A stretch of DNA of 64,000 nt from Perna viridis (lineage: Eukaryota), in NCBI GenBank assembly GCA_037379345.1, contig CM074512.1:26908001-26972000 (forward strand), given 5' to 3'. The notes beneath the pieces are model-generated. The model was given only the letters and a program-made list of their open reading frames with translations. It was not told the DNA's origin and ran no database searches. Shown one piece after another: positions 2 to 52,690 of this stretch (position 1 is the first letter of the stretch; the number at the start of each line of letters is the position of its first letter). Both the position numbers and the translations under genes were made by a program.

Positions 2-307
2 GTCCTCCAACAGTAACTGTGGCTCAGCCATCTTACTCAGTCACTACTGGACAACAAGTGACCTTGGTCTGTACTGTGACCTCTAACTTGGCTATCAATA
101 ATGTCTACTGGCAGAGAAATGTTGGTGGTACCATAACAACCATCCAATCTAACACCAACACCAACAAATATAGTGGTAGTACTGTTAATGCACCATCCTT
201 AACCATCTCTAATGCTGCCCAGAGTGATGTTGGTACATATACCTGTTTTGCTACTAACAGTGTAGGAACTGGACAAAGTACAACGACCACTCTCAGTGTT
301 ACAGGAA
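2..307 (+). CDS. Exon 1 in window: Ig domain 1 (306 nt, phase 1-1)
   Basis: Position 1 is the G of the acceptor, by alignment to exon 2. Donor A|GTATGT. PPTVTVAQPSYSV...C...W...DVGTYTC. Confidence 0.9.
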
Positions 308-3300
308 GTATGTATTTTTGTCTCTTTTAATCTGGTAATAGAAATTGTGCCTTTGCAAAGACAAGTTACTTGTATATGTGTTTTGTCCCACCTTTGTTTT
401 TGCATGTTTTATATATGAGTTTGTCATTAACACATATAACACTATTTTACCACCAAACATGTTTTGTTTATAATTAAAGTTATTTTTTGCTGATGTTAAA
501 TAACTTGAAATATTAACATTTGTTGTATGATAATTGTCCTGCTATATACAAAAAAGTGTTTTAATGCTTCCTTTGTTATAGATGGATAGTTTGTTCATAT
601 GATCACTTTATTATAAGAATTACATCCTTGCCAGATAAATATAGCCAGCTTATGCTATAGATTCATGAAGTAATCAACATTGAGCTTAAATTGAATTTCA
701 ATGTTTTTAGCAGTAATATAAAGAATACCAGTAATAATGATAAAATGTTGTAAGAATTTAAAGAATCCTTTGCCAATAAACATTAGTATTTCAAGTCTGT
801 TAACAAAACTCTTGGTTGCCTTTCAAATCATGGTAGGTTTACTTATTGTATACTGATAAATTACTATGATCATCATTTAGATATTTTTTACAACTTATAG
901 AAATATTTGTATTTCTGTCCTTATTATATGCAAAATAATTTCCCACTTTAATATCTGGATAACTGATACATATTCCATCTTCATTAACCTCAGGTCCCCC
1001 AACAGTAACTGTGGCTCAGCCATCTTACTCAGTCACTACTGGACAACAAGTGACCTTGGTCTGTACTGTGACCTCTAACCTGGCTATCAATAATGTCTAC
1101 TGGCAGAGAAATGTTGGTGGTACCATAACAACCATCCAATCTAACACCAACACCAACAAATATAGTGGTAGTACTGTTAATGCACCATCCTTAACCATCT
1201 CTAATGCTGCCCAGAGTGATGTTGGTACATATACCTGTTTTGCTACTAACAGTGTAGGAACTGGACAAAGTACAACGACCACTCTCAGTGTTACAGGAAG
1301 TATGTATAATTTGGTTTGGTTAATAAGTTATAATGTATATCCAGAATTCTAGCAATATAGAGATGTCTTTTTGTTGTGTATCTTTGAGTATCATTTTGGT
1401 TTACACATCAGTTTTGTGATTGAATTCCAGTTTTGTACAGCTATTTGAGGATGCAGGTCATGATAATATACACAAATTGATGAATATAACTAAATGCATA
1501 GAAATAAAAGTGAAAATTTGTATACTTTTTAAATATGAATGAACTACTGTTTTGTTGTAGTTTGTATTTATTATCCTTCAAAAAAGAATTCATTTTTTAA
1601 TATAAAAGTAATTTTAAATAATTGAAAAAAAAACTTTCCCTGTTACATTAAAAAACATTTCCCACATTATTTTAGATCTTGATTAGCTGTAGGCAGACAA
1701 TGTTGTTTGTCCCTCTTCTGTGTTTGCTTCTTTTCCTTGTCTTTGTCTTTTATCTCTTGCAAAATAATAACATTCAACAAAATGGCAAAATTGTTTATAT
1801 TTTCTTGAGTAATTTAACTTTGTAAATGATGATAAAAATGTCGCACATAGTCCATCATTATTAAGTCTATATGTATGGAATGTGATTTGATTTCCTCATA
1901 TAAGGGGTGATTGTTAAATGTCAATCAAAGATCCCTTTGTTAGTGAAAGAAAACAAACTACGTATACAATTTGTAAGTAAAAATGAAAATAGGCATGGAT
2001 GTTAGTTGACAAAATTTTGGCTTATGTCATCTTAAAATTCAGTGTGCACTTTCTTCAGGTAATTAAAGGTGTGCTTCTGATTTACAGAAAAAAAACAAGC
2101 CGATGATCCAAACAGTCCAGATATATTTATTTATATGATTTGTTCTTTTTAACCTTGTCAAGCCTGAATTGAATGATAGTAAAATACTATATTTCAGTTA
2201 TTAATATAAATAAAGAAAATTTGTTGATTTGTAGAACCCTTTACATCACCTCTTTCAAATGAATTTAAGGATACTAGTAACTAAAAACAAAGGTTGCCTT
2301 CCATAGCTTGAGGGTCTTGTCTTTTTTGGTTTACCTAAACCACTGGCATAAAATTCTGTCTTGCTAATTTTTAGTACTCAGTTAATTTGCTTTTGCTGTC
2401 AGAAGCTTTCTTTAAGTAACCATTTATAGTTGGTAGTAATTAATAACTGACTTGCTTTAACTCATAATTTTTTTTTAAATATATTTATCACAAAATTTTG
2501 TAGCAATACCAGTAGTTAATGTACAACAAGCAACATACTCTGTTAACTCGGGACAGTCTGTAACATTGGTCTGTACTGTCACCTCAAACCTTGCTATAAA
2601 TAATGTCTACTGGCAGAGAAATGTTGGTGGTACCATAACAACCATCCAATCCACCACCAACACCAACAAATATAGTGGCAGTACTTCGTCTTCACCATCC
2701 CTAACCATCTTTAATGTTGCATCATCTGATTTGGGCACTTATACCTGTTTTGCCAGCAATATTGTTGGAACAGGACAAAGTAGTACCACTACATTAGTTA
2801 TTTCCTTTCCACCAACTGTTGTAATTCAGCAGTCATCATATTCTGTCAGTGCTGGTCAATCAGTGACCTTGGTCTGCACAGTAACATCAAGTCTTCAGAT
2901 ATCATCTGTGCAATGGCAGAGAAATTTTGGTGGTATCATAACAACCATTACATCCAACACAAATACCAACAAATATAGTGGCAGTACTACCAACATTCCA
3001 TCGTTGTCAATTTCAAACACTGACTCGAATGATGCTGGGCAATATACTTGTTATGCCTCTAACAGTGCTGGCACAGGCCAGAGTACCATAACAACTTTAA
3101 CAGTGTTGTTGCCTCCTTTAGTGAGTGTTCCCCAGTCATTTTATTCAATAACAACTGGCCAGGCTATAACCTTGACTTGTACTGTGACCTCTACCCTTCC
3201 TGTCAACAGTGTCTACTGGCAAAGAAATGTTGGTGGCACAATAACAACGATTACTTCTAACACCAACACTAATAAATATAGTGGCAGTTCAACAAACACA

Positions 3301-6300
3301 CCATCCCTAACAATCTTTAGTTCTAACTTCAATGATGCTGGCAGTTACACTTGTTTTGCTACTAACAGCGCTGGAACTGGGCGAAGCAACCCAACAACTC
3401 TTAGCGTAACTGGAAGTAGGTTTAGTAGCAGTATTTCATAATGTTACATGGTTCATGTTTATAAAAGTAGGTATGCAAGCTTTCATGCTTCCAACTTGAA
3501 TTATGTAATCCATGTATTTCATGTAACACGTGTAAGGAATTATAAGGAGAGTGAAAATGTTGATTATGTCAAAGAGACAACAAACCTGGCAGGATGAAAA
3601 ATGTCAAGGCCACTCATGGGTCTTCCATGAAATTCTTTGAAGACACATGAGTGACCTGGAGCTGACATTTTTGCTACTATTGTGGCAACAGAATAATCGC
3701 TTGAAAACTTTAAGGATGAAAGTGTAGAAAGAGCAATTTTTTTTCAGTATACATATAGAAAAATGTACAGCTAAAATCTATATTTCTGAAATTATGCAAA
3801 AGGAAAGGAAATTTAAAGGATAAGATTTTGAAAAATACTTTAAGAAATGAATTCTTCTTGTGAAAAATGCAGATATGTATACTTATATAATGAATTATTT
3901 AACATCTCCATACAAGCCTACTTAATGAACTGCTTTTAAAATATTATATATATGTTCTATTGAGCTAGCTATAGCTTTGTTCATTGCCCTTTTGTTCAGG
4001 AGTTGTGTAATCAAGGCTTTGTTCAGACTAAACTAATTTACTTTCCAATAATGATGCCCATTTTATTTTAAACCAATTTCAGACATTTCACAAGCACATA
4101 AAAAATAAAATATTTTGCAAATGTAACATTCGGGGAAAAATCCCTATGTTTTGTTACACTTCTACCATACACATTTTTTTGTGTTGTAATTATATTTTTG
4201 TTGTCTCATTTATTCACACTCTTAAGTTGGAACAGAGATTTGCTGGTGTTACTATAAATGATTCTTGTGATATATCTGGTTAATTTTTACCCCCTGTCTA
4301 CAGTAATATCAGTAAGCTAAAGGTTTTAATATTGCTTTTTTCAATTGTTTATGCATTTTATTGATCAATAAGTCTTCGATAGATATCATTTTTTGCTGAA
4401 ATAATTTTCAAGGAATATTGAGATATTTAGACAACTGTTTGCCTAAATTTTGATATTTTTAATAGCATAAGTTACAACAATACAATCGTAGCAATGCTTG
4501 GTTGACAAGTTTTCATACATATAACTTTTTAATTTTTTATAGGTCCACCCACAGTTACAGTAGCTCAGCCATCTTACTCTGCCACAACAGGACAACAAGT
4601 GACCTTGGTCTGTACTGTGACCTCTAACCTACTTGTCAATAATGTCTACTGGCAGAGAAATGTTGGTGGTACCATAACAACCATCCAATCTAACACCAAC
4701 ACCAACAAATATAGTGGAAGTACTGTTAATGCACCATCCTTAACCATCTCTAATGCTGCCCAGAGTGATGTTGGTACATATACCTGTTTTGCTACGAACA
4801 GTGTAGGAACTGGACAAAGTACAACGACCACTCTCAGTGTTACAGGAGGTATGGTTACTGCATTTTTTATATGAAATGATTTATCAGTTTGAAAAAAGTT
4901 TATCAAAGATTAATTTACATATTTAATCCAGTATTATTTTGACATGACATTACGACTCCAAAGATTTTTATTTTCAGTCGAAGATGAAATGATATAAAGT
5001 TTTGATTTTGTTCAGACTTCTTATAATTGACAAGGCAATAAAAACAAGTGAATGACACATATAAGTTTCAAAACAGCAATTATGGGTTAATTTATACATA
5101 ACAACAGAAGGTTCAGTCATCCTTAATTGTGCTCTCACACCAAATATTACTTTTTTTATAATTTGAGAGAAATTGGAGTGACATGTACAATGCTACAAAC
5201 AGGTACACTAAGACAGTACAGTGTTCACACAAACTGCCTTGTATAAGTAATGTGATTTATACCTGTTTACTGATGTGTAAGAATAGGAAAGAGTTCTGTT
5301 ATAATCATTAGTAGTAGTAGTAGGATTTATCTGCTTGCATTATTTTGGATATGATGTATAAAATTTGTCATTGAATTTCCATCTCGTGCCTTTTTGTTTG
5401 CCTTTTATTTTTTTTAGAATAGATCTGCATTTCCTTTACATTTCACGTAGTTTTAGAAGTCATTATGTTGTTATTTTCAGCCTCATAGATACTAATTGTA
5501 TTAAACAGATATTTTAGTTGGTAGTTGACAGCTAATGATATATATTTCTGGTTCCCTTTTATGGTATTAATAGAAATTAGTCTGTGATTATTTAAATAAA
5601 TCATTTTATCAAAAGCTAGAAAAATTTTTTCCATTACATGGCTTTCATTTCAGGTTCAGTATATAACAGTGAGAGAATGTGAAGCATAGACATTTTTTTG
5701 CCATTTTTGTAATTTTGTTGCACTTCAAGTATTTAATAACTGTAATTTCAGTTCCCCCTACAGTCACTATTCTCCAACCATCATATTCTGTCAATGTTGG
5801 AAACACCATAACTTTAGAATGTACTGTTACATCAACACTTCCTGTTACCTCTGTCCAGTGGCAGAGGAACATTGGTGGATCCATAACCACCATCACATCC
5901 ACTAGCAACACCAACAAATATGGTGGCAGTACTACCAGTATTCCTTCATTGACCATTAATTCAGCAGAACTTGGAGATAGTGGCAGTTACACATGTTTTG
6001 CTACTAATATTGTTGGAAGTGGACAGAGCAGTGCTACTACACTTACTGTCAATGCCAGTATGTTTAAAGATTTTTGCTGTCTACTCATACAACTTAATTT
6101 TGATTCAGGATTGCCTGAGCTTTTTACTGATTTATAATTTTTCATAATCATTATACTGGTTCTAATACATGTAGTTATTTTTTGTTATGGATAATTCTTT
6201 TCTGATAAAGGTAAAAACTTCTAACTTTATTTTGACAAATAGATTTGATTTTTTAAAGGAAATAATATGAACAATACACAAGATTGGAACTTTTTTTTTC

Positions 6301-9300
6301 TGTTAACAAAATATTGAATCAATTTTCAGATCCACCTACTGTTAATGTATTACAACCATCATATGGCGTAACAGTTAGTAACTCTGTTACCTTACAGTGT
6401 GTTGTTACTTCTAGTCTACCGGTCACCTCTGTCTACTGGCAGAGAAATGTCGGGGGTTCTGTCACAACTATTACCAGTAATACCAATACCAACAAGTACT
6501 CTGGAAGTACAGCTAATGCACCATCATTGACCATTTTAAGTGCTGAGTTGGGAGACACTGGAAGTTATACCTGTTTTGCATCTAACAGTGCAGGAACTGG
6601 CCAAAGCACTGTTACCACCCTCACTGTTACTGGCAGTAGGTTTTCATTTGCACTGTGTTCCTTGATACTCATATATAACATAGATTATCTTTATAATCTC
6701 CATTACCATTACAGAATGTTTGTTTAATGTACTCCATAAGCTAGAAGCATAATATGGTCTTGGAATATAGCTTCATACTCTTTCTTTTCTTGCTATAACT
6801 GTGTATTTTTTCATTATTCTAATAATCAATTATAGGAATAAAAATATTTTGTTTTTTTTACTCAACATACATAGGAAATGACTTTACAAAACAATTTCTT
6901 TTTGAATACATGCAAAATTATTTGAATTTTCTATTTTTTTTATCCTCAAAGTAAATAAATTGACAACATTTTAAATAATAACAAAAAAGAAATGCATGTA
7001 AGATAACATTTGGACTATCAATTATGAATGATATGACCCAAACAAATGACCTTTAATTTTCTTTTTTTTTATAAAATTGATGAAAAAATCCTGAGAGTCA
7101 GTGTACTTGACTGCCCATTGTGTTAGGCCTGTATCAAATAATGTTAACTTCTTTGATGATGGCTGTTTCAACCACATAATTACTGGATATAAGTTTTCAC
7201 TTGGCATCTTTTGTCTTGGGTTGACATACGCTGTTAAGTATACATGACCATACCATATTTGTTGTACACCTATATACACCCACCCTTATCTTATACAAAT
7301 TCAATGTACATTTTATATATTTATCTTATCCTAAGTATTGTGCCTACACTTTTGTAGCCTTTCAAATGTGTCCTTAACTGATAATAATGGTACCGGTAAA
7401 TGGATTTATTTTGGAAGAAAAAAATGCTTTAAAATAGCAGGAATGTTACATTAAAATGTATTATACTATTTTGTAAATATTGTCCTCATTATTTAAATAT
7501 TTGTACATAATTTGGAAAGCATTCGTTTACAGTTGTTATCAGTAAAAAAGATATGAAAGTGACCCTAATTTAGAATGGAAACTTCAACACACAAAAAAAA
7601 AAGAATTATTGACCTTCATATAAAACGGATTTTACAAGTGGAGTAGGTAATAAAATGTTCTAAATGGTTTCAATAGTTATTCCCAAGCCATTTTTAAATG
7701 AAATTATTTCAGTTCCCCCAACTGTCACAATATTACAGCCAACCTACTCAGTCACAGTTGGTGATTCTGTTACTCTTGAATGTACTGTGACATCTGTACT
7801 CCCTGTAACTAATGTGGAATGGCAGAGAAATATTGGTGGTACCATAACAACCATCACATCCACCACTGACACTAACAAATACACAGGAAGTACTGTCAGA
7901 GTTCCGTCATTGACAATATCAATCACAGAATTAGCAGATACTGGAAGTTATACTTGCTTTGCTTCCAACAGTGTAGGAACTGGTCAGAGTACTGTTACAA
8001 CCTTGACAGTTACTGGCAGTAGGTTTCTCTTGACACTTGGAATGGCAATATCAACCTTATTTATATATTTTTTCTCATCTTTACTGTAAGCTCTTATACT
8101 CATAACATTGATGTGCCTCCTATTCCTTGTGTCCTATGCATTCTGTCACTCAACACAAAACATTTATATTTTTTACATTGATCTAGGTTTACTATGATGT
8201 ATTTCTTTTTAAATATTTTCTTGACATTTTTTGCATGATCTGAATTCCTGGATATTTCTTTTTGCAAATTAGGAATATGGGTCAACTGTATCTGAGCAAT
8301 AAAATTGACAATGATAACTTACTAGTTATAATATACTTTCTGACTTTTATTATATGGAGAAATTAACTATTCCAATATAGATAACAGTTAATGGTAATTA
8401 TATTGGTTGAAAACTCTTTATTGGTAAACTGTATGTATTTTATACCCCCTTCTTTAAATACATGTACTAATGGAGTATAGTGATCAGGATGTCTGTTTAT
8501 CCACACATTGTATACCTTTATGCATTTTTGAATTCATCCTTCAGGGAATAATTTTTAGGTGCTTGTTTTTCCTGTTGTACATTTGCTATTTTTAATTGAT
8601 TTTAATGGGACTTTGGAATATCTTTAATAAGAATATGGATTTTGCCACTGATTCAAAATTTACAGTTATGCAATGCTGCTGTGCATCTGCTATCTGAACG
8701 AATTTTAGGTTTTCATCAATTTTACATGGACTTAAATCATATGTATCATGAAGTAGTCACAACTCCAAACCTGCCTGATGGTATTTTATGACATTTTCAG
8801 TGAATGATTATTTAATGATATTTTACACCTGCTTTTTTGATTTTTGATAAAAATGAATTTTTGGTTTCCATTAAAATGATGTAAATTGCCATAAACTCAA
8901 TTAGATGGTACATGTGTTGTAACTAATTTTCAGCCTGTTACCTCACTTAGGCTATGCCTTCTGTTGAGGTATCCATTTCATTTTAGTTTTTGCTTATATA
9001 TTTGATCTCGTTATTGAAGTAGTTTATATCAAAGTTAAGCATAGAATGATGTTTGTTTTTGTTTGTTGGGGTTTAACGTCCGAGCAGCAATATTTCAGCT
9101 ATATTCAGACGAAAGCATAGAATGAAAAGTCAAGATTATATTTGCATGTATGCATGACCTAGGTGTGTCTCTGTGGAGGGCATTCTTTTGTGAGCTTTAC
9201 TAAGAGCTCACAAAGTGTTGTTAATGACAGAAAAAGTTGACGTTAATTTAAAGCTGAAGGGAATTTTTGTCTCTGTACTGCTCTCATTTTACTTATGATA

Positions 9301-11106
9301 ATACTTCAGAATATATTTGAAGTACTATAACATTTTAAACATTGTCAAATCAATTTTAGCTCCTCCCATCCCCACAATAGTAGAGCCATCTTATTCCATC
9401 ACCCTTGGCAATGCTGTAACCCTGGAATGTTCTGTTACATCTATCCTCCCTGTCACTAAAGTGGAATGGCAAAAAAATATAGCTGGTATAATAACATCAA
9501 TTACATCTACAACTGACACCAACAAATACACAGGAAGTACTGTTAGTACACCATCCCTGACAATTTTGTCAACAGAATTTGCAGATACTGGAACTTATAC
9601 ATGTTTAGCAGTCAACAGTGTAGGAACTGGTCAGAGTACTGTTACAACCTTAACAGTTAGTGGCAGTAGGTTTCGAATATAAACTCGCTATTGGTTTCCA
9701 ACTTCTATCAGGGCTAAATGACTCTCTTCCATATTTACATAATATTGTCAACCCTGTTCTTGATTTCTATGGTATTAGTTTTTGCTGGTATTTGTTTCTG
9801 AGCATTGTCTGAAATATCTAATGCATATGACTTATTATGTATTCAATGGTTGTAGTTATATCAAAACATCTAATTTAAAACCATTTTTTCTTCTGTTTTC
9901 TAAATAATGCCAAAAACTTATTTCTACAGGCCACTTTGTCACTAGATTGTTGCTTTTTTGTTGTAAAAATAATAAAGACTGTATATTAGTGCTATCAAAG
10001 AGCTTTTATTCTTGATTTAATTTATTAAGGAAGTACAGGAATATATAGTCTGTTCCCAAAATACAGATCTATATACAGAAAGAACTACAGTTACATGAAA
10101 ATATGGTGTACTTAGATAAAAAAGCATCATCTGTTTGATAGGCTGCACCCTGTATCACTTCTACCTATGGTCTGAATTATATATATCTTTCATGCTCTGT
10201 TTGGGTATTTTCTGCTGTCTTATTTCAATAACCTAAAAACTGTGCTTTATTGATACCACATCATGTACTGGTACATTTAAAACCACTGAAATACTCTTGC
10301 ATGTTTACCGGTATATTTTTTAACTAGATACAGTTGTAATCATTTACTAATGGTAAACTACTGTACAATAGTTTTTTCAATTTCATTTGATTATTATGGT
10401 CAAAATCTGATTTTCCAGACTGATAAAACTTATTTTTCTACTTACTTATGTAACCAATCATTTTTCATGTATAGTTGTATAATTAATTTGCCAATTTAAT
10501 TATGACAAATGATGTTTTAAATCAACAGTGCTGTGCTGCTGCTCAACTCTTTCTTCACAATTTGTGAAAAGTAGTTGCAGTTTTCTATGTGGTCTTGCAA
10601 ATTCTGCATGGATTTATTTATTTGATTAATACATTTCTTTTTGTTCATTCTATTTTTTAAAGTAAACAATGGATAATAGCCTTTGAATCATCAAACATTT
10701 TTCTACTTTTTGTTTCCATCTACTTTTATTCTCTGTTATTTGTTCTTGTAATGTTTGCAGAAGTTTATATATATATGATATATATATATACTTCTGCAAA
10801 CATTACAAGATATATATATATACATACACACTGCTCCATCGGATCAAAATTGATAAGGAAGATAATGTAAAAAGGTCTGAAAAATTCCAAACGTGCGTGT
10901 ATATATATATATATATATATACAACGTCTCAGAATGTGATGACTCTATTTGCAACACTGCTCCATCGGATCAAATTGATACAGGGAAGATATATAAACGT
11001 ATAGAAAGGTCACTCTGCTGTGCGAGTTCGAGTCCCGCGGAGGGAACGACCAAAAATTTGCATCGCAAATTTGACAGTTCTAACATCGTTGGGAATTTTT
11101 CAGACC

Positions 11107-11147
<41 letters not shown>

Positions 11148-35100: not shown

Positions 35101-38100
35101 ACCAAAATAAACTTGAATGATAATAAAGTTTCGATTGATTTAATTGAGCTAATTTTTTTGGAAGCACCCTCAAAATACATTTTATCAACATGATGGCTTA
35201 AGATCTGAAACTATTCCAGATCAGTGTTATATGTATTTGCCAAAAGTTAATTAGAATGCAAGTTTTTTTCTCAGTTTTCAAGCAGTATGACCGAACTATT
35301 TACATATTTGCTGTAATATAAAATTTCAGCATAAGGGCATGTCACCATGGAGATCTCTTGTCTCACAAATCTTTTTCACAAAACTATTCTAAGTACATGT
35401 ATAATTGAATATGACTTTGTTACAGACATACCAATAGTTCAGGTTCTGCAGAGTCAGTACTCAGTAAACATTGGTAGCAGCAGGACTTTAGAATGTACAG
35501 TGACAGCCAACCCTACTCATACCAATGTATATTGGCAGAGGAATGTTGCAGGCCAATTAACTCAAATCACAATTGACAATGTGAAGTACTCTGGATCTAC
35601 AGTTGGTAACCCATCCTTGACTGTAAATAATGCTGAGAATAATGATGAAGGTTTCTATATCTGCTTTGCTACCAATAGTGTTGGAACTGGTCAAAGTGCT
35701 AATACATACCTTGATGTTATTGGAAGTAAGTGTGTTAATAATTATCAATTTAATTTATATTTCTTGCTGGGAAGTGACAAAGGGGCATGGAAAGGGTATT
35801 CCTTTATTAGTCCTTTTGTCTAACCATTCATAAGGTTGATGCATCTTGATGATGAAAGGCTCAGTAGTTGAAAAATTCTATAAATATAAGTCTTCCCTCT
35901 TTGTAAGAGTTGTTGTGAAATAATATTCTTATAGCTTGGTGAGCATATGTTTGAAGAGCAGTTTGACCATTAATGAGTAAGTTTTTTTTTTCAATTTCTT
36001 TCTGGCAAAGCAGAATAAGACTATAGTATAGGTTTGATTTGTCACTCTGCTTTATTTTTTAGTGGATAAAGTGGTTTGCGTTATTGATCTCCATTTGTAA
36101 TTGGTATGTTAGTTTAGTAACACATTAAATTCCAACTTTGATCAATCAGAATAACTTTTTGGCCAGTTTTGCCCTTTGACATTGTCTTTTTGTGAAATGT
36201 TAAGTTGTATGTACCTTTTTCTGAGTTGAATGATTTGATTATTTGCTTATACGTAGATCTTAATAAATAAATAAGTAACAGCTCATTTTAGTTTGTTATT
36301 TATAGAGTTATGGCCCTTGGTCTTTTTTTATATGCAATTTTCAATTGTTAAGACATTTTTGTACCCCTTACAAACAAATTTTAGGGGTATGTAGGGATCA
36401 GCCTGTCTGTCTGTTTGTCTGTCCATTGATACCTTGGTCTGTCTTCATTCATTGTTAGTACCACTCTTTCTGAACTCATTGGATTTTTGTGGAATTTTAT
36501 ATGTAGGATGGGAATCATATGTATATGTAAATAAAGGAATAAAATTATTGTCAGAATTTTTGATAGAAAGTACAGTTTTGACCCTTTTATTTCTTCATAT
36601 TGTGGCTTGTAGGTGACTCAAGTTTGCTCTCTGCAATACACTGAGATTTTGTGTTGAAATAAACATGTGATTGTTAAATCATCTAAGTTTATATATACTG
36701 TATATTTTTTTGGTATAATAATTGCAAGCCAATTTTCAACATTTTTAGCTCACCTGGCCAAAGGACATTGTTAACATTGTCAACATTCACTATGATCTAA
36801 TTATTCCCTTGGTTTTCAGGTATTCTAATTATCAGCATATTATCATCCTGGTTTTAGGTATTCCAGTTATCAACATTCACTATGAACTAATTATTCCCCA
36901 GGTTATCAAGTATTACAATTGCCAACATACTGTATGAACTTATTCCCTCTGGTTTTCAGGTATTCCAATTGTCAACATTCCCAGTCCAACTTTCACTGTT
37001 AATTATGGTGGTACTGTGACCTTGACCTGTACTGTGACAGCCAACCCTGCTCATACCACAGTCTACTGGCAAAAAATTGTCAACAGTGTTGCTACAACTG
37101 TCAGTGTCAACAACAGGTATTCTGGCTCAACTGTCAGTACTCCCTCACTGACCATCACAAATGCTGAACAATCAGATGAAGGTTTTTATGTATGTTATGC
37201 TACTAACAGCATTGGAACAGGAAACAGTCAACAAACATTCTTAGATGTTATTGGAAGTAAGTGTAGAGTCTACTAGGTATGGGATTGGTGTGTCTGTATT
37301 GAGTAAAGTAAATATGTAAAATGTTACTTGGATATACATATAGTTAATATCCAGCTTCCATTTTACACAATTTCTTAGTTTAAACTATTACATGTATATA
37401 GAAGACCTAATTGGGCAGTACTTACAGCTGGGTTCATAATTCTTGTATTCCTTACTTGCTCAGCCATCATAAAATAAGGTTATGGTGAATGGGACTTGGC
37501 TAAAGTTTACATAAACAACAGTTAATTGAGCTACTTGTAATATACTTGTATGATCATACTCTTAGAAGATCTTCAGTATCTACTACAAAGAGAAAAGAAA
37601 GAATAATGTAGTTTTCTTTATTTTGGAAACCTGACTGGTGAGTTCCACAGCTAAACATCTTGCTTGTGATTAACTAGGTCTTGGATAACAGCTATAAAAC
37701 CAAACAATACACTTTGTGAAGTTGATTTGAAAAGATCAAAGTTATCTGCTGAGGATCTCTCTAAATAAAACTGTGGATTCACTGTATATACGTAAACAGA
37801 AGGAAGTTTTATGACACACATAATATGTTTGAAATTGATTTTCAGGTGTCCCCATTGTACAAGTCTTATCCAACACATATAGTACCAATGTTGGAGCTAG
37901 CATTACATTAGAGTGCCGAGTGACCTCTAACCCTGCTCACACTTCTGTGCAATGGCTCCGTGTCCTAAATGGAGTCACATCCAGCATCAATCTTGGAACT
38001 GTTGGCAAATACTCTGGTTCTACAGTAAACCAACCATCACTTACTATCAATAATCCTGTTAACGCTGATGAAGGATATTATATATGTCAGGCAACCAACT

Positions 38101-41100
38101 CGGTTGGTTCAGGTCAAAGTTCTCAAACATATCTTGATGTCATTGGAAGTAAGTAAAACCTAATTTTGTTTGTGTATTGTTCATGCAGAGATAACCTTTA
38201 AAAGCTCATAAAGAGAAGAATTCTAGAATTAATTTGGTTTTAACTATTACGTAACTGTCTTTTTAAGAATCATTCAAATTCAATAAAATGTGATACACCT
38301 CAAAAAAAGGCTACATATTTTTTATTTTTGTTATTAAGATGCTTTATAGGTGCATATGATGAAATGTTTATTCATTCCATTCTGTCTGTTCTTAGGAGAT
38401 TTTCCAAATGGAAAATCCAACAGTTTCTATTGAATTTTAGTGACATTTACAGAGTTATCTCCCTTAATTTTGAATTCTACAGTACATTCTATATAACTTT
38501 GATCTCCTATGAACAAGGGTTATATGAAAAATCACATGGTACTTTCTGTTTACTGACATTTTAAACAAAATATCAAAAATAAAAATATGTAGGTTTTCCA
38601 ACCATGAATCACATTTTGCATGTGTTGATTGTTATGTGGAGTGCTACTTAAGTAGTGTAAGATATGCTGTAAATTCAGAAACAATTGTGGATGTTTAAAT
38701 TTTGTGATTTAAGACAAAATTGTGATTTTAATTATTGCAATAATCTGATTAATCCAGTTACATTCTTTTAAAAGTTTTGATTATTGCCTTTAGTACAACC
38801 CTGCCTCTTTTTTCATAGTAATAAAAACATTGTAATATTTTCTAAATTAACAATATGCAAAATGAAATATGAAAACATTATAGCCTTTATTCATATTTGA
38901 CCTTAAATGTTATCAATATTTTGTAGGTGTTTTGTCTGTTGTTGTACCCCAGTCACAGTACAGTGCTAACTATGGCCAGTCTGTTACTCTGGTTTGTTCT
39001 GTTTCTGGAACACCAGCAGCTACATCTGTGTATTGGCAGAAGGTGAAGAATGGCCAAACTACAACAATTAATACCAACTCCAATAGTAACAAATACAGTG
39101 GAGTTACATTGCAGAATCCTTCACTGACTATTAGTAATGTTGATAATTCTGATGAAGCCACCTACACCTGTTTTGGTGTTAACTCTATTGGAACAGGCCA
39201 GAGTCAGCAAACTGTTCTCTCTATTCTTGGAAGTAAGTCTTATATTTGTTCGAATTTACACTAAAGAATTAGTATCAAGTACAAATTGAAAAAAATATTG
39301 TTATCTTTAATATTTTGAATATTACTGCAGTTTCCATTTAACATATTTATACACTTTGAAACTTTGAGTCAAGAATGTATAGATATAATTTATCATGAAA
39401 TGAATTATAACATGCTGCATTTAAAACATTTTGATATTTTCAGTCTTTAACTACCAGTCATCATGCCTCCTCTTCAAACATTCTTTTTGGGGTTTAAAGG
39501 AATTATCCTGTCTGCACCCTTCTAAACTGCTTAATGGATTTTAATGAAAATTTAAGGGAATGATAGGCAGTAAATGGATATGGGCATAAAGGAAGATAAT
39601 TATTTGATGCCTTCAAAGGGAGATAATTCAAGTTCAGAATTTTACATAATGATATCTTGGAGAACTACCATTTGATTTTTTAATCAGGAAGAAGAAAGAG
39701 GAGTTTAAAAAAAGTAAGGGTAAAAAATCAACTAGTTTATCTATAATTTAAGAATAAGATCAGACAAAGTTGGGATAAATTCTTTCACCCAGTACATTTG
39801 AGGTTTTTCTCCTATGTAAGAAGAAAGGTTGAGTAGTTCTGGTTTTTTTTGGTGGAGAAGGGAGGAGGAGATTTGAAATAAGTAATGCAGGATTGAAATT
39901 TTTAAGAAATAAAAAGGCAGACAGGCCATAAGAAATAAGAAAAATAAAATGGCAGGACCTATTATTATCCTGATATTTTTTGTTTATTTTCAGGCAATAT
40001 ATATTTATACATTTTTTCATAATGAAAAAAAGCAGGATAGAAAATTTCATCTAACCCCCTGAACCCCATTAAAATCCAATTGTTGCTCTCTTTAGCACAA
40101 CTCATAAATTGCTCAATGGATTTTGTTGAAATTTTAATGTAATGCTTCATATATAGGTGTCTTTGAAGGAATAGATAATCCAGCTAATGTTTCAAATGTT
40201 TTTAATGTCAGGTTGCTGCATTAGGAGGTTATTAAACCTGCAAAGGATTTATCTTAATGTATTACTACTTAAAGCAGGGGATATAATTTGTGTGAGCTTG
40301 CTCAAGTGTGTGTAGTATAAATGGCATTGTGCACCTGCTATGTAGATTTATTTGATCAGTATGATGGACTTTGGGTTTCCTTATGCCGTATTCAGACTTT
40401 TCCATGTTAGAAATACTCCAACGAGGTTCCTATTCTATATTAGTAATGCTTTTATGCATCTTAGATTAAAACTTTTGATTTGAATAAGTTTTAGGCTCAG
40501 ATCAAAACTTAAAGATCACATGGAAGTTTTAGAAAGTATTTATGTACCTACGTGACTTGTAGGTGTGTGGGTATTCTTTTGTGAGGTATGCTCACAGTAG
40601 TGCTAATTTTGTTGAAAATTGGTCAATAAACATTCAGTTCACCATGGTTTATACAATGTCAGTTTTAGGGCAATTAGAAATGGAATCATGTTGTTATTCT
40701 AGATTTACCAACTGCCACGATACAATCAAACCAATATTCAGTCATTGTTGGAGGATCTGTCACCATACAATGTGTAGTTACTGGTAATCCTGCTGTCACT
40801 ACTATACAGTGGACTAGATTAGTTGGTGGTAATACTGATGTTGTAGATATTGCTGGTACGGCACGTTACAGTGGTGGAACTGTCAACTCTCCATCACTTG
40901 TTATTTCTAACGCACAGAACGGTGATGAAGGATACTATACGTGTGCTGCTACCAATATTGTAGGAACTGGTACCTCACAGCAATCATTTTTAGACATAAC
41001 TGGAAGTAAGTTGATAATAAAAATACTTACAGAATATTTATAAAAATATTCATTTTATAGTTAGTTACTGTATGTAGTGAAACATGTCTAAATTGAACTC

Positions 41101-44100
41101 TGAATAAACCAAAGTACTTTGTGAAGTCACTGTATATTACTAAAATGTATTTTGACCCTGTGCAGGTCTGGGTGTCAAAAGAATAGGCCTGCAGCAGCGC
41201 TAAGCTTGTCATAAAAGGCGACTAAATAGTGCTCAGAAATCTAGCCAGGGGCTAGGAGCTCTGCCCACAGAGCAACTGGGATGTGTGCCCCAGGTGGTGG
41301 AATGGGGTACCCCTGGTGTGTTACATGCTGGGGTTGTCAGGCTATAATACGGAAAACCTGACTGCAAACCATAGTGGTGCACCGTGTTGGGAAAGATGGC
41401 ACGTTCCTTGCACGTTAAAGAACCCTGCTGTGGTATTCGATAGGAGTATGAACCTTTGCGCTCTGCCACAGGAGGCTAAATTGCCCGACACTACCCATCC
41501 CTCCCTTTTATCTTGTGGCAATCAAAATTGGTCGACCCTGTTGTCCTTGTGTCCCATCCCTTTTTTTCATTTCGTCATCATTGTTTCATGTTAATTTTGT
41601 CATCCATTTCATGTTCATCGCCTGAATAAAGCTGAAATATTGCTGCTCAGGTGGTAAACCCCAACAATGAATCAATCAATCTAAAATGTATTTTGAACCT
41701 GGGTAAATCAAATACCTGTCTTATTCAAACAAATTGTACAGTGGTTCAGTTTAGAAAAATATCATGATATCTATGTCTTTCATGAAAGTTGAATGATAAA
41801 ATGGATGCAGTAAACAATATTTTGGTATCATTTTAGGTCCTCCAATTGTCAGCATTCCACAGAGTCAATACAGTGTTACTATTGGCAACAGTATAACCTT
41901 AGTCTGTAGTGTGACCTCTAACCCTGCTCATACCAGTGTAAGGTGGGTGAAAACTCTGAACAATGTTGAAACCGACATCACTGTAACCAACAGCAACAAA
42001 TACAGTGGAGGATCAGTAAATACACCATCTTTAACAATCAGCAGTGCCGCAAGTGCTGATGGTGGATACTACAAATGTTATGCCTCTAATAGTGTTGGAA
42101 CTGGACAAAGTCAAAGTACTTTCCTTAATGTAGTTGGAAGTAAGTGGTGTAGAGATAGAAAATATCATTGTACAAGTGGCAAGATTTTTATCATCTGTTT
42201 ACTATTGATATCTGTTTCCTTGCATAAACCATCATATAAAAAACACTTGTGTTTGTCATTAGAACAAAAAAAAAAATTCACAGATAAGATATATGTTTTA
42301 CAATGTGTTCTTATCATATTTTGTTATGTAATGAAATGTTTGACAATCAGAAAAAATATCTTCTATTATTTTTTTTTTTACAAAATCCAGATTATTGTTT
42401 TGAAGATGTATTGAACACTGTCTGTCCATAATATAATAACTTGATAATTTGATATAAAATTAATTTGAATCATAAAATTATCTTTAATGATCTTTTTGTA
42501 GATGCTCCACAAGTGAATATTTTAGCCAATACCTACAGTGTAAATGTTGGTAGCTCTGTTACCCTGCAGTGTGTTGTATCTGCCAATCCACAACATACAA
42601 CAGTATACTGGAAAAAGGTTGTCAATGGAGTTCCAACTAATGTAAATCTGGCTACAGCTAACAACAAATATAGTGGATCTACCGTCACATCTCCATCTCT
42701 TGTTATAAACAATGCAGTTGTAGCAGATGAAGGCTACTATGTATGCTATGCTGATAACAGCGTTGGAACAGGACAGAGTTCTCAAACATTCTTAGATGTT
42801 GTAGGAAGTAAGTTCATATTTGTTCTTTAAATACATATATAGGTATATTCAACTTGTGGAAATTCTTAATCATGAACTCATGGATCATTACGGTGTATCC
42901 ATCTGCACCATGAGAACTGATTTGGTCAATGTGTCATAATTTTCCTTTCCTCTTTCGTCTACCCTGTACTTGACTTTTTATATGAAACTCGGCGGATGTT
43001 TCTAGAAAAACAGAGGACACTTATCCTACCAGTGCACTTGGTCCATGCTCCCAGTTTTTAGTTGAGTCTAAATTACTCATTTACTTCAGTTCTTTGTTGT
43101 ATGTGTGTGTTTTTCATGTCTGGGTTACATTCTTTTGATTTCCAGTAGAATTTTGGTTATCTTGATTACATGGTACTCTTTAAAACATTTCAATTTGGTA
43201 AAATACCAGTAATTAATTTATGGCAGGTGTAACCTGTCAGAGGACACTTGAATATATAGACATATTTCAAAATCTTCTTGCCACAATTTTTTTCCTTTTT
43301 GTTGCTTTTCTAGGTATCTTGGTGGTTCATGTTGCATTGTAAAAAAAACATACATTTGCTTACAATAGTCAAACAGAGTCTGAAACTGCAGGTGCTTTGG
43401 TTGTTCATATTTATATATGTAAATTTGAAAATTGGGTTTAATATGGTATGGCAATGTTGTTATTCTTTACACAGAAATAGAATAATAAACTGAATAAAAA
43501 TAATTATTTAAGACCATATAGTTAAGGCTTTTTAGTGAAGAAGATATGAAATGTATGGAAACTCTGTAAGACGTGACTTCCTGTCAGACTGAAATCAAGC
43601 TTTCAGTGCTTCTAAACTATAAACTCCTGTCAGACTGAAATCAAGCTTTCAGTGCTTCTAAACTTAGTCCTCTAATAGAATCTTTATTAGGCCATTGTAA
43701 AAAAATTCATTTCTTTTCAAAAAAGTAATAAACATTTTTTTATAATAAGAGAAAAATCTCTTCTATTCTGATGAAGTGACTTAAATATTGGGAATATTTT
43801 TTATGTTTTTAAATCAGATCTTAATTTTTTTTAAAATACATGTATGAGTAATGTACCATTGTTTTCATCAATGAGTTAATTACAAGGCCCCTGTTCGCAT
43901 GTTTTTGATTGATATTGAGTCAATTTACCTATTACATAAAATTCTTTTTGACTTTTAAATTTCTAGATGTACCAATTGTCAATGTTGTTCAGCTCTCATA
44001 CCAAGTGAACCTTGGAAGTGACATAGAACTGGAATGTACAATTACATCTAATCCAGCCCATACAACTGTATACTGGCACAAGTTAGTTAATGGCCAACCC

Positions 44101-47100
44101 CAGCCTATAACCGTAACAGGATCTAACAAGTATAGTGGATCTACCTTGACAACACCATCACTTACTATCCGTAATACTGTGCAAGCTGATGCTGGAAGTT
44201 ATCGTTGTCTGGCTGATAATAGTGTTGGTACTGGCCAATCACAGATTACAATTCTCAATGTACTTGGCAGTAAGTAACACTTAATTTGATAAACTTTTCA
44301 AAATAATGAAGAAGACAGAAATTTTTATCGATGATTATACGTAAGTTTCTTTTCAAATGTCAAAGTTTAATTAATGACAAAAAAAGAAGACAGTGTGTCT
44401 GCAGTGGATGATTGAATAAAAAGGTAAACTATACATGAATTTACGCTTCAATACACACATATTCCTTTGCATACGTATGGGAGCATGGATGAATATTTAC
44501 ACATAATCGGCTGCACAACGACAGTGAAGGCGGCGTGGATGAAGTGATAGTTGGCATTGGAAAATATGACATGTAAAAAATTCAGCAGGAATATAATTGT
44601 TAAGGAAATATAACTAGGAAGAAGGAAAATTACAACAAGGTGTTTTTAAGGTTTCAGTCAGACTCAGTTCTAAGTTTTTTTTACGGAGCTGAAAATTACT
44701 CTCTTGACCGGTAAAATCAGTGTGCATATAATAAACTATTCTTATTGCTATATTATTCCATTAAGTTCATTGCCACACTCTTTCGAACTGCATGACCGCC
44801 ATATTGGTTTCAAGTTGACTGGCGTGCATGCATGTATGAATGATCTGGCGAAGTTCATGCATGTATGAACTTTCTGGCGAAGTTCATGCATGTATGAACT
44901 TTCTGGCAACAATGTTCTCGATCAATCAAAAATGGCTATAAGCACGAAGAATCTCATGATTAGAATTATTAACAGTTGATTATTGATATTTTTTTTAGAT
45001 GTACCAACTGTTGTATTGGACAAATCAGCTTACACTGTACCATATGGTGATACCCTGACCATTACTTGTACAATCACATCTGATCCATCCCACACTAGTG
45101 TTTACTGGCAGAGAATCAGCAATGGTGTTACCCAAACTATCACTGTACAGAATAATAACAAATATGCTGGATCATCCCTACAGGTTCCGTCACTGACCAT
45201 CTTCAATGCTGATGGCAATGATGAGGGAGATTACATATGTTTTGCTACAAATGCAGTTGGAACTGGTCAGAGTGGGAGAGGAACTGTAGATGTTACTGGA
45301 AGTCAGTTTCAATAAGACTTCTCCATAATCACTTTTTTTAAGTAAAATCGAAACTTTATAATTTAAAGTTAATTTCTTCTGCCATTCTGTGAAAACATAA
45401 AAAAAAGAAAAATGTCATTCTATAAAATCAAAAAAAAAGTTTGGAATGTGGTCAAAAGTGCAAGTTATTGGAGGAAATATGAAATGCCTCTCTAAATTGC
45501 TGAAGTATTATAACTATTATAAAATGAATACTACAAATTAAAAAATGGAATTAACTGACTAAATAAACGATGGGGCTCCCTCTTAATGGCCAACACTTAC
45601 ATTACAAATATATCATCAGTGTTGCTGAGTATAGCAATACCCTAGTTAAGTAGATGCTAATTATTTATTTATCTATTTAAGGTGTACCAAGTGTTAGAAT
45701 ACTGAAAAGCAGTTATTCTGTCCAGAAAGGTAATCCCATTACACTGGAATGTGAGGTTACTGGTACTCCAGCCCATACCAGTGTTTATTGGACACGTATT
45801 GTCAATAGTCAGACTGTTACTCTAACAATGACTGGTGCTAAATATGGTGGTTCTACACCAAGTTCACCATCATTGATTATATTTAATGCTGCAGAAAGTG
45901 ATGAAGGCTCATACATTTGCCATGCTACCAATGGAATTGGTACAGGCCACAGTTCTCAAACCGTTCTTGATGTCCAAGGCTGTAAGTTTTTTTGTAAAAT
46001 TAGAATATATTAAAATGTATAGATTTATCATACTAGCTTTTTGGGGCAATTAATGGGATAATATTTAACTTGTTGAACTGAAAATTTGTGTCATAATGTT
46101 TATAATAATATTTTATATTAAAGTGTATGATAAGGACAATATAACAGTTTCATAAAAAGTAAAAATAACTGTAAATAGTAATTCTTTGTAAATCAGTTTT
46201 AGGATTACCCATGGTCCAAAACTGTTATGTCTTTGTAAATCAGTTATAGGATTACCCTTGGTCCAAAACTGCTATGCTTGTGATTTGAATATTACAGGGA
46301 CAGTAATATTATTTTTCTACTTTTAGATGTTCCAAATGTTGTTGCTAGTATTACACCAACTGTCAGTGTAGGAGATTCCGTTGTTATTCAGTGTGTTGTT
46401 ACATCAGATCCTAAAGAGACATCCATCACCTGGCAGAAAGTCATTAACAATGTTCCTACCTCTTTGTCTATAACATCTAACAGTAGATACTCCGGTGGAA
46501 CTGTAACAACACCATCTCTCACCATTGCTAATGTTGAGGACAATGATGAAGGACAATACATTTGTCAGGCTACTAACAGTGTTGGTACTGGATCTAGTAA
46601 CCAGGTTTACCTTGATGTTGTAGGAGGTCAGTCATTCTTAAATTAGTTTTTTTGGATATTTTGTTTAACAATCAAGGTGATAAGCATTTTCAGTTGACAT
46701 AAAGTTGTACTAATTTACTAAATGAATCCTAATATTTTGACTTCTTATCTTATTAAACAGAATATTCTCATTTTGTTCTGAAATTTCATTTGATAGATGC
46801 TCCAAGACTGACATATGTGACACCAGCCAGGATAACAGTTCCAGAGGGTCAGTTGGTATTAGCCACCTGTGTCAGTACAGCCAACCCAGCCGCAACCTAC
46901 CGGTGGTTTAAGGACAATAGCAATCAGGTGTTTGCCACTGGCGCAGAACTTAGGATTACAACATCTCAGAGGAGTGATATGGGTGTTTACACATGTCGAG
47001 CCAGTAACAATTATGGCACTGATGATGCTCAGCTCACTGTTGATGTTCAATGTAAGCTTTAGATATGCAGTTTTATTGAAGAGTTTTTAGTTAAGGGTAA

Positions 47101-52645: not shown

Positions 52646-52690
<45 letters not shown>

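What the first reader, a model, noticed from the sequence alone, without database searches (positions are those of the whole stretch)
2..46626. 38 interchangeable symmetric Ig exons upstream of a distinct 'constant' module: possible Dscam-like or length-variable splicing array
Seen: exons 1-38 are homologous, all phase 1-1 and multiples of 3 nt (297-306 nt, one of 912). Any subset could splice in frame onto exons 39-47 (different Ig types, TM, tail). Established: arthropod Dscam1 uses arrays of duplicated Ig exons with mutually exclusive choice, and titin uses Ig-exon skipping to tune length; one phase-1 exon per Ig domain is also simply the IgSF norm. Inference: the locus could generate a repertoire of receptors differing in ectodomain identity or length (self/non-self or adhesion code). 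Against strict mutual exclusion: all these introns exceed 240 nt, I found no docking/selector elements or per-exon leaders, and exon 3 carries three domains in tandem. Constitutive inclusion or block skipping is therefore at least as likely.
Basis: partly seen in the sequence, partly recalled or inferred. Interest (0 to 1): 0.8.

Follow-up and report, generated by a model that had tools for sequence, protein, structure and literature searches.

The report
Giant mussel Ig-repeat membrane protein gene
The 38 look-alike exons are real, but public RNA data show them spliced one after another into a single giant (about 58-Ig-domain) membrane protein that other bivalves also have, so this is a long adhesion-type rod and not a Dscam-like choice array.

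Summary
Observation confirmed. There are 38 phase 1-1 Ig exons at 2-46626 (297-306 nt, one of 912 nt) with canonical splice sites. The array runs 35 kb further upstream (12 more exons), to a signal-peptide exon.

Interpretation: the Dscam-like headline is not supported.
- Spliced contigs from four independent studies join exons 33 to 41 strictly consecutively at the predicted sites.
- The introns hold no shared or complementary motif.
- Exons 16-38 each have a collinear 1:1 ortholog in the Mytilus edulis protein 'hemicentin-1-like' (XP_071159627.1).
- The near-identical distal exons are under purifying selection (dN/dS 0.04-0.25), not diversification.

The gene encodes signal peptide, about 54 array Ig domains, 4 other Ig domains, a TM segment and a Tyr-rich tail. 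It is not a true hemicentin, Dscam or titin.

RefSeq models of the Mytilus, scallop and oyster relatives list dozens of isoforms differing by whole Ig units, almost all in the distal, recently expanded zone. That zone (exons 1-15 and upstream) was not tested in this species.

The scan earlier flagged a similar idea for a filamin gene elsewhere in this genome (s1-751519). Verdict: new member of an annotated but uncharacterised bivalve family; modest interest.

The parts
2..19281 (+). Distal 'young' zone of the Ig array inside the window: exons 1-15 (17 Ig domains; exon 3 = 2504-3415 holds three). Continues upstream of the window for 12 more exons.
   Evidence: Splice sites and phases. Pairwise identity 60-100%. 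No 1:1 Mytilus partner. dN/dS 0.04-0.25. Exon+intron unit of about 993 bp repeated upstream at 96-97%.
19692..46626 (+). Proximal 'old' zone: exons 16-38, 23 single-Ig exons, each with its own collinear ortholog in Mytilus edulis domains 23-45.
   Evidence: Coordinates. Identity 38-68% among themselves. 1:1 orthology at 63-85%. Exons 33-38 joined consecutively in RNA contigs.
46797..47051 (+). Exon 39, a different Ig type (255 nt, phase 1-1).
   Evidence: Joint 46626>46797 and 47051>47424 in 4 runs. Pfam Ig_3. 71% identity to the M. edulis ortholog.
47424..47732 (+). Exon 40, an Ig domain distantly related to the array type.
   Evidence: joints, with a loose end that continues into exon 41 at 49089. 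(75 bits to the array profile). (65% identity).
49089..49337 (+). Exon 41, I-set Ig.
   Evidence: Loose-end 30-mer of the contigs maps uniquely at 49089. Pfam. 81% identity to the ortholog.
49594..49857 (+). Exon 42, membrane-proximal Ig. Boundaries come from splice motifs and ortholog alignment, not from reads.
   Evidence: (79% identity).
50243..50362 (+). Stalk plus transmembrane exon (hydrophobic 23-residue segment), 120 nt, phase 1-1.
   Evidence: Hydropathy scan. Splice context. Aligned to the ortholog's TM.
54459..54705 (+). Last coding exon: cytoplasmic tail with a conserved Tyr-rich, Arg/Lys-rich motif, and the stop codon. Small tail exons lie between 50.4 and 54.4 kb (one match at 52790-52843) and were not mapped.
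   Evidence: (58% identity to the ortholog tail).
42860..43150 (.). Interspersed repeat of about 235 bp inside intron 34. It is not part of the gene product and explains a spike of RNA depth.
   Evidence: Depth 2,600-15,000. More than 7,900 first-look candidates genome-wide at about 87% identity. No Rfam match.

Best explanation
The window holds most of one gene of about 93 kb for a giant single-pass membrane protein of the immunoglobulin superfamily. Its order is: signal peptide, about 54 tandem Ig domains of one type (one phase 1-1 exon per domain, with two exons holding three domains), four further Ig domains, a transmembrane helix, and a short Tyr-rich cytoplasmic tail. That makes about 6,000 residues if every exon is used. 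It is the ortholog of the Mytilus 'hemicentin-1-like' gene and belongs to a small bivalve family, with at least three more such arrays in this genome. The main mRNA is made by ordinary consecutive splicing: the symmetric phases are the usual legacy of exon duplication in IgSF genes, not a device for choosing exons. The ectodomain has two zones. The membrane-proximal zone is a fixed set of 23 individually conserved domains (exons 16-38). The distal zone (exons 1-15 and the 12 upstream exons) grows and shrinks by tandem exon duplication in each lineage, while selection keeps the copies alike in protein sequence. Shown: exon structure, consecutive joining of exons 33-41, orthology, architecture and selection pattern. 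Inferred: inclusion of exons 15-32 on the same contig, function as a long extracellular rod (adhesion or spacer receptor), and signalling through tail tyrosines.
For: Exon anatomy. Expression and splicing: about 14 runs hold 0.36 of the sampled words of 41837-47700, which is close to its exon fraction. In 4 runs from 4 studies, one contig of 9.1-9.9 kb joins exons 33>34>35>36>37>38>39>40>41 at the predicted GT..AG sites. No other GT..AG joint between exons appears; the single extra row with GT..AG ends (41935>42724) falls inside exons 33 and 34 and is a cross-match of a sister exon. That contig carries 5,464-5,485 nt upstream of exon 33, and exons 15-32 sum to 5,454 nt. A 30-mer from a record with the same depth figure as that contig in every run, hence probably the same contig, maps uniquely to exon 15. 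No intron hub or motif: at most 4 of 39 introns share any local match on either strand, and k-mer sharing does not exceed shuffles. Orthology: the C-terminal module is 58-81% identical to M. edulis XP_071159627.1, except the short TM segment at 54%. Exons 16-38 hit M. edulis domains 23-45 in order, always better than any paralog. The signal-peptide exon and first Ig lie upstream. dN/dS is 0.04-0.25 among distal copies, with dS up to 0.8. TM segment. The ortholog has Ig-only Pfam content. Paralogous arrays lie on C1 and C5. Exon 28 has a single 100% match in the genome, so the intronless contigs are not a retrocopy.
Against: All RNA evidence is from assembled contigs, which drop minor isoforms, so low-level skipping cannot be excluded anywhere. 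Only 8 junctions are seen directly. The length arithmetic for exons 15-32 is not unique: skipping one 300-nt exon and reaching further into exons 14/13 would give a similar length. The distal zone (exons 1-14 and upstream) was not examined with reads. The contigs break at its border, which fits repeats but would also fit alternative junctions. RefSeq lists many whole-Ig-unit isoforms for the orthologs. No functional data exist.
Confidence: 0.8

Rival explanations
1. Length-tuning by cassette or block skipping: the proximal zone is constitutive, but exons of the distal young zone (window exons 1-15 and the 12 upstream) are skipped singly or in blocks. This would give receptors whose ectodomain differs in length by whole Ig units, as titin and filamin do. 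It is compatible with the best explanation rather than opposed to it.
For: All exons are symmetric. RefSeq isoforms of the M. edulis ortholog differ by 1, 2, 3 or 6 units of 102 aa, all ending at least 2,956 residues from the C-terminus. The same pattern holds in M. trossulus and M. galloprovincialis. One M. californianus isoform reaches about 5-6 domains further toward the membrane, into the conserved proximal zone. A scallop paralog shows gaps of 101, 103, 201 and 303 aa. C. virginica has up to X46 isoforms. The RNA contigs of this species break at the border of the distal zone.
Against: The isoforms are computational models built from short reads on near-identical exons (sister domains 75-100% identical), where spurious i to i+2 alignments are expected. 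No skipping joint was seen in this species in the stretch laid. Purifying selection on every copy shows each is used, but says nothing about regulation.
Confidence: 0.35
2. Dscam-like mutually exclusive choice: each mRNA takes one (or very few) of the 38 exons and splices it onto the constant module, giving a repertoire of receptor identities.
For: Only the formal possibility: homologous, symmetric exons lie upstream of a distinct constant part.
Against: Six array exons (33-38) lie consecutively on one transcript contig in four studies. There is no docking or selector complementarity and no recurrent intron motif. Exon 3 holds three domains. All introns are long enough to splice. The 23 proximal exons are conserved one-to-one and in order with Mytilus, and the RefSeq proteins of relatives contain 35-60 Ig domains in series. 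dN/dS is low.
Confidence: 0.02
3. Part of the distal array is not used at all: some near-identical copies are very recent, possibly polymorphic or mis-assembled tandem duplicates, or are silent pseudo-exons.
For: Five exon+intron units of about 993 bp are 96-100% identical. Such arrays are prone to collapse or expansion in assemblies and to copy-number variation.
Against: All copies keep open frames and intact AG/GT sites. Older copies show dS up to 0.8 with dN/dS near 0.1, which requires expression. DNA runs of the species hold 0.78-0.88 of the words of the stretch tested, but that stretch is not the distal zone.
Confidence: 0.1

Closest known systems
Bivalve 'hemicentin-1-like' giant transmembrane IgSF proteins (RefSeq models, e.g. 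Mytilus edulis XP_071159627.1; also M. trossulus, M. californianus, M. galloprovincialis; more distant in scallops, pearl oyster and oysters)
   Same: Same architecture: signal peptide, 45 or more tandem Ig domains, four distinct Ig domains, TM, and a conserved Tyr- and Arg-rich tail. The C-terminal module is 58-81% identical (TM segment 54%). The 23 proximal domains are collinear 1:1. The distal zone consists of near-identical repeats.
   Different: The number and sequence of distal domains are lineage-specific, with no 1:1 partners. This species has two three-domain exons. No study of function for any member turned up in my literature searches.
Hemicentin-1 / fibulin-6 (vertebrates, C. elegans him-4)
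   Same: A long uninterrupted run of more than 40 I-set Ig domains, at about 27-31% identity. This is the source of the automatic name.
   Different: True hemicentins are secreted matrix proteins with an N-terminal VWA domain, TSP1 repeats, a G2F domain, EGF repeats and a fibulin C-terminus. None of these is present here or in the ortholog. This protein has a TM helix and a cytoplasmic tail.
Arthropod Dscam1 hypervariable exon clusters
   Same: Tandemly duplicated Ig-coding exons in an IgSF transmembrane receptor.
   Different: Dscam uses exactly one exon per cluster, guided by docking and selector RNA pairing. It has 10 Ig plus 6 FN3 domains, and its variants are diversified. Here exons are included in series, no pairing elements are found, there is no FN3, and the copies are kept alike.
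Titin I-band Ig exons (and filamin rod repeats)
   Same: One symmetric exon per Ig domain, and a rod built from tens of Ig domains. The best solved-structure match is titin I65-I70, 3b43. Length tuning by exon skipping is the most plausible kind of alternative splicing here.
   Different: Titin and filamin are intracellular, and titin also carries FN3 and kinase domains. This protein is extracellular with a signal peptide and TM. Skipping is not shown in this species.

Membership tests
Dscam1-type mutually exclusive exon array | Only one exon of the cluster is present in any one mRNA | tested here: not met
   Exons 33-38 are all present, in genomic order, on one spliced contig in 4 runs from 4 studies.
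Dscam1-type mutually exclusive exon array | A docking site complementary to a selector sequence next to each variable exon (or another recurrent intron element) | tested here: not met
   All-against-all blastn of 39 introns (word 9) finds at most 4 introns sharing any site, with fewer matches on the opposite strand than on the same strand. 8-10-mer sharing is within the shuffled null. Weak, gapped pairing could escape these tests.
Dscam1-type mutually exclusive exon array | Dscam domain plan (10 Ig, 6 FN3, TM) | tested here: not met
   Only Ig families are found in window exons 39-42 and in the full ortholog (47 Ig_3 stretches, no FN3).
Hemicentin / fibulin-6 | N-terminal VWA, TSP1, G2F, EGF-Ca repeats and a fibulin-type C-terminus; secreted | tested here: not met
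   Pfam on the ortholog gives Ig-type families only. Vertebrate hemicentins carry PF00090, PF07474 and PF07645; the bivalve proteins do not. A TM exon lies at 50243-50362.
Hemicentin / fibulin-6 | Long tandem run of I-set Ig domains | tested here: met
   54 array domains plus 4 others.
Titin-like splice-tunable Ig rod | One symmetric (phase 1-1) exon per Ig domain | tested here: met
Titin-like splice-tunable Ig rod | Differential skipping of Ig exons between transcripts | tested here: inconclusive
   None is seen for exons 33-41 in this species. Whole-Ig-unit isoforms appear in RefSeq models of relatives.
Titin-like splice-tunable Ig rod | Intracellular sarcomeric protein with FN3 and kinase domains | tested here: not met
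   Signal-peptide exon, TM helix, no FN3 or kinase.
Bivalve giant TM IgSF ('hemicentin-1-like', Mytilus XP_071159627.1 group) | Collinear C-terminal module: four distinct Ig domains, TM, and a conserved tail motif | tested here: met
   tblastn matches at 71%, 65%, 81% and 79% for the four Ig exons, plus TM (54%) and tail (58%), in order.
Bivalve giant TM IgSF ('hemicentin-1-like', Mytilus XP_071159627.1 group) | Domain-by-domain orthology of the proximal Ig array | tested here: met
   Exons 16-38 hit M. edulis domains 23-45 in order at 63-85% identity. Each hit is above the second-best match and above the best own paralog.

The most novel reading that the evidence does not exclude
The distal, fast-evolving block of near-identical Ig exons (window exons 1-15 plus 12 upstream) is a regulated splice-tunable region. 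Tissues or individuals would then display receptors of different reach or valency, combined with copy-number differences between individuals and species. The result would be a bivalve-specific adhesion or self/non-self 'length code' on a conserved 27-domain stalk.
Probability: 0.15. Interest if true: 0.55.

Novelty: new member of a known kind. Interest (0 to 1): 0.3.

Why it matters
The result removes a tempting but wrong reading: a mollusc counterpart of Dscam hypervariability. It replaces it with a defined object, a roughly 6,000-residue, 58-Ig transmembrane protein conserved across bivalves but mislabelled 'hemicentin-1-like' and, as far as my searches show, unstudied. Its two-zone build is a clean natural case for studying how repeat number in giant adhesion proteins evolves: a stalk of 23 individually conserved domains, plus a distal block that each lineage re-expands while selection keeps the copies alike. 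It is also a concrete place to test whether the many Ig-unit isoforms in RefSeq bivalve annotations are real or are mapping artefacts.

Tried and rejected
1. Intron motif and complementarity search for docking or selector elements: nothing above chance.

2. Using contig length to prove inclusion of exons 15-32. The sum fits (5,454 against 5,464-5,485 nt), but the fit is not unique because all exons are about 300 nt. It is kept only as 'consistent'. I also tried to read the 10-31 nt overhang as a k-mer signature of a branch at the exon 14/15 border and dropped that as over-interpretation.

3. Looking for this species' own transcript-derived proteins in the protein collections, to read exon order in the distal zone. 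None was present, only the window's own ORF.

4. Literature searches for a characterised member of the family or for Ig-exon splicing in bivalves. These returned only Dscam papers and transcriptome lists that mention hemicentin in passing.

5. Rfam scan of the RNA-depth spike in intron 34: no family. It is an interspersed repeat.

6. Hemicentin, Dscam and titin membership: each rejected on defining domains.

All searches were made exon by exon by reference. As a result, no full-length comparison, structure prediction or exact-protein look-up of the product was made.

Full report
WHAT IS THERE

The window is AT-rich eukaryotic DNA (32% G+C) without N. Stop-to-stop frames on the plus strand show a long series of about 100-residue Ig-like frames. 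Each ends in the same donor context (GG-N-N|GT) and starts after a pyrimidine tract and AG.

Mapping gives 38 exons between 2 and 46626. All are phase 1-1, and all are 297-306 nt except exon 3 (2504-3415, 912 nt, three domains). Introns are 244-3699 nt.

Exon starts-ends:
- Exons 1-10: 2-307, 994-1299, 2504-3415, 4543-4848, 5752-6057, 6330-6635, 7713-8018, 9360-9665, 11433-11738, 12435-12740.
- Exons 11-20: 13915-14220, 14778-15083, 15997-16302, 16866-17171, 18976-19281, 19692-19994, 20376-20675, 22478-22783, 26483-26782, 27056-27361.
- Exons 21-30: 28407-28706, 29971-30276, 30521-30826, 32044-32349, 33022-33324, 33660-33959, 34385-34687, 35426-35725, 36960-37256, 37846-38148.
- Exons 31-38: 38927-39232, 40703-41005, 41837-42139, 42502-42807, 43967-44269, 44999-45301, 45682-45981, 46327-46626.

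Every exon tested is Ig_3/I-set in Pfam.

THE ARRAY IS LARGER THAN THE FINDING

The window is G000:C2:26908001-26972000. In 80 kb fetched upstream, a profile built from the 40 window domains finds 14 more domains in 12 exons. These include a second three-domain exon at window position -7857 to -6946. The first domain lies at -35331, and nothing lies further upstream.

A signal-peptide exon lies at -38270 to -38195. It has a consensus GC-type donor and joins in phase 1 to the first Ig exon, mirroring the start of the Mytilus protein.

Downstream of exon 38 come:
- exon 39 (46797-47051);
- exon 40 (47424-47732);
- exon 41 (49089-49337);
- exon 42 (about 49594-49857);
- a 120-nt stalk and TM exon (50243-50362);
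- small tail exons that I did not map;
- a last coding exon (54459-54705).

The product would have about 58 Ig domains and about 6,000 residues if all exons are used.

HOW IT IS SPLICED

About 20 public runs from 7 studies of one organism hold part of 41837-47700. Roughly 14 of them hold 0.36-0.37 of its sampled words, close to the exon fraction of that stretch. Three DNA-like runs hold 0.78-0.88.

I laid four of the 0.36 runs, from four different studies, on 41800-47750. In each, a single contig of 9.1-9.9 kb covers exons 33, 34, 35, 36, 37, 38, 39 and 40 with at most one mismatch. It joins them at exactly the predicted GT..AG sites, and its loose end continues into exon 41 (49089).

No other GT..AG joint between exons appears. 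The few other 'joints' have 20-42 matching letters. One of them (41935>42724) has GT..AG ends by chance but falls inside exons 33 and 34. All are partial cross-matches of sister exons, with the same depth figure as the main contig.

Because the contigs lack the introns, the runs are RNA. Because exon 28 has one 100% match in the genome, they are not copies of a retrogene.

The contigs carry 5,464-5,485 nt upstream of exon 33, and exons 15-32 sum to 5,454 nt. A 30-mer from a record with the same depth figure as the main contig in every run, hence probably that contig, maps uniquely inside exon 15. This is consistent with all of exons 15-32 being included and with the contig breaking where the near-identical exons begin. 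It does not prove it, since all exons are about 300 nt.

Two caveats apply. Contigs drop minor variants.

NO MACHINERY FOR EXCLUSIVE CHOICE

All-against-all comparison of the 39 introns shows no site shared by more than 4 introns on either strand. Complementary matches are rarer than same-strand ones. The only long matches are introns 10 and 11 (recent duplication) and a repeat shared by introns 14 and 27. Sharing of 8-, 9- and 10-mers among introns does not exceed dinucleotide shuffles.

TWO ZONES

Among themselves, exons 1-15 are 60-100% identical in protein. Exons 1 and 2 are identical, exon 4 is 97% identical to them, and exons 7 and 9-13 are 89-99% identical. Exons 16-38 are 38-68% identical.

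The best relative is Mytilus edulis 'hemicentin-1-like isoform X20', XP_071159627.1, 4,924 aa. Its last 700 residues align in order to exons 39, 40, 41 and 42 (71, 65, 81 and 79%), to the TM exon (54%) and to the tail (58%).

In the longest M. edulis isoform, domains 1-22 are 63-100% identical to a sister domain (most 75-100%), and domains 23-45 are 52-68% identical. Window exons 16-38 hit M. edulis domains 23-45 one-to-one and in order, at 63-85% identity. Each hit is above the second-best domain and above the best paralog in this genome. Exons 1-15 have no such partner.

The proximal 23 domains are therefore an old, fixed series, and the distal zone has been rebuilt separately in each lineage.

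Within the distal zone, synonymous divergence between copies reaches 0.1-0.8 while dN/dS stays at 0.04-0.25. The copies are thus kept alike by selection and are not diversified as a recognition repertoire would be.

WHAT RELATIVES SAY ABOUT LENGTH VARIANTS

RefSeq lists many isoforms for this family:
- M. edulis up to X23;
- M. trossulus up to X19;
- M. californianus up to X13;
- Argopecten irradians up to X37;
- Crassostrea virginica up to X46;
- Saccostrea up to X19.

Aligning the isoforms shows differences of whole Ig units. In a scallop paralog the gaps are 101, 103, 201 and 303 aa. In M. edulis they are 102/104, 204, 306 and 612 aa.

In M. edulis, M. trossulus and M. galloprovincialis, all differences end at least 2,954 residues from the C-terminus, that is, inside the young zone. 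One M. californianus isoform reaches about five to six domains further toward the membrane, into the conserved proximal zone.

These are computational models resting on short reads over near-identical exons, so they are a lead and not a demonstration.

WHAT IT IS AND IS NOT

The ortholog contains only Ig-type Pfam families: 47 Ig_3 stretches, with no VWA, TSP1, G2F, EGF, FN3 or kinase. With a signal peptide and a TM helix, it is neither a hemicentin, nor a Dscam, nor a titin.

The closest solved structures are titin I65-I70, Dscam Ig1-8, Robo and contactins, which amounts to generic I-set similarity.

The genome holds further arrays of the same domain type on C1 (54.59-54.61 Mb) and C5 (9.10-9.14, 9.28-9.31 and 9.46-9.49 Mb). 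Three of them have an exon-42-like domain.

The organism is coded. I did not try to name it.

Three literature searches found no paper on this protein family.

LIMITS

- No structure prediction was run.
- Splicing of exons 1-14 and of the 12 upstream exons in this species is untested.
- Tissue of expression is unknown because the runs are coded.

VERDICT

This is a real, large Ig-exon array and an ordinary (if extreme) one-exon-per-domain IgSF gene. It is consecutively spliced where tested and orthologous to an annotated but unstudied bivalve gene. The Dscam-like reading is rejected. Splice-tuned length in the distal zone remains possible (about 0.35), and its more ambitious 'code' version unlikely (about 0.15).

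Noticed in passing
window 42860-43150 (intron 34): RNA contig depth jumps to 2,600-15,000 here, against about 40 on the exons. The stretch is an interspersed repeat of about 235 bp with more than 7,900 first-look candidates across all chromosomes at about 87% identity. It looks SINE-like and abundantly transcribed, and has no Rfam family.
   Followed up: partly
window -2998 to 1299 (G000:C2:26905000-26909300): Five tandem units of about 993 bp (one Ig exon plus its intron) are 96-100% identical, introns included. The near-identity of exons 1 and 2 is therefore recent whole-unit duplication, not exon-only homogenisation. Only exon 4 sits among unrelated introns. The units could be copy-number polymorphic or an assembly risk.
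   Followed up: partly
window 2504-3415 and -7857 to -6946: There are two separate exons that each hold three Ig domains without introns. This implies intron loss followed by duplication of a multi-exon block within the distal zone.
   Followed up: no
window -38270 to -38195: The signal-peptide exon appears to use a GC-AG intron, with the rest of the donor matching the consensus perfectly.
   Followed up: no
window 51427-51876: A 150-codon open frame inside a tail intron resembles the C-terminal part of a non-LTR retrotransposon reverse-transcriptase ORF. It has no Pfam hit and is probably a decayed LINE fragment.
   Followed up: partly
window 50400-54460: The cytoplasmic tail is split into small exons (one match to the Mytilus tail at 52790-52843). 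In a scallop paralog, two RefSeq isoforms differ by a 15-residue tail segment, so tail micro-exons may be alternative.
   Followed up: no
G000:C1:54590000-54608400; C5:9106000-9142000; C5:9280000-9306200; C5:9462700-9485600: At least four further arrays of the same Ig-exon type exist. Three have an exon-42-like membrane-proximal domain, and the two inverted C5 arrays look like a recent segmental duplication.
   Followed up: no
window exons 7 and 9-14 (7713-17171): Copies that are 84-99% identical in protein differ at many synonymous sites (dS 0.1-0.8). The block is older than its protein identity suggests and is held by purifying selection.
   Followed up: yes
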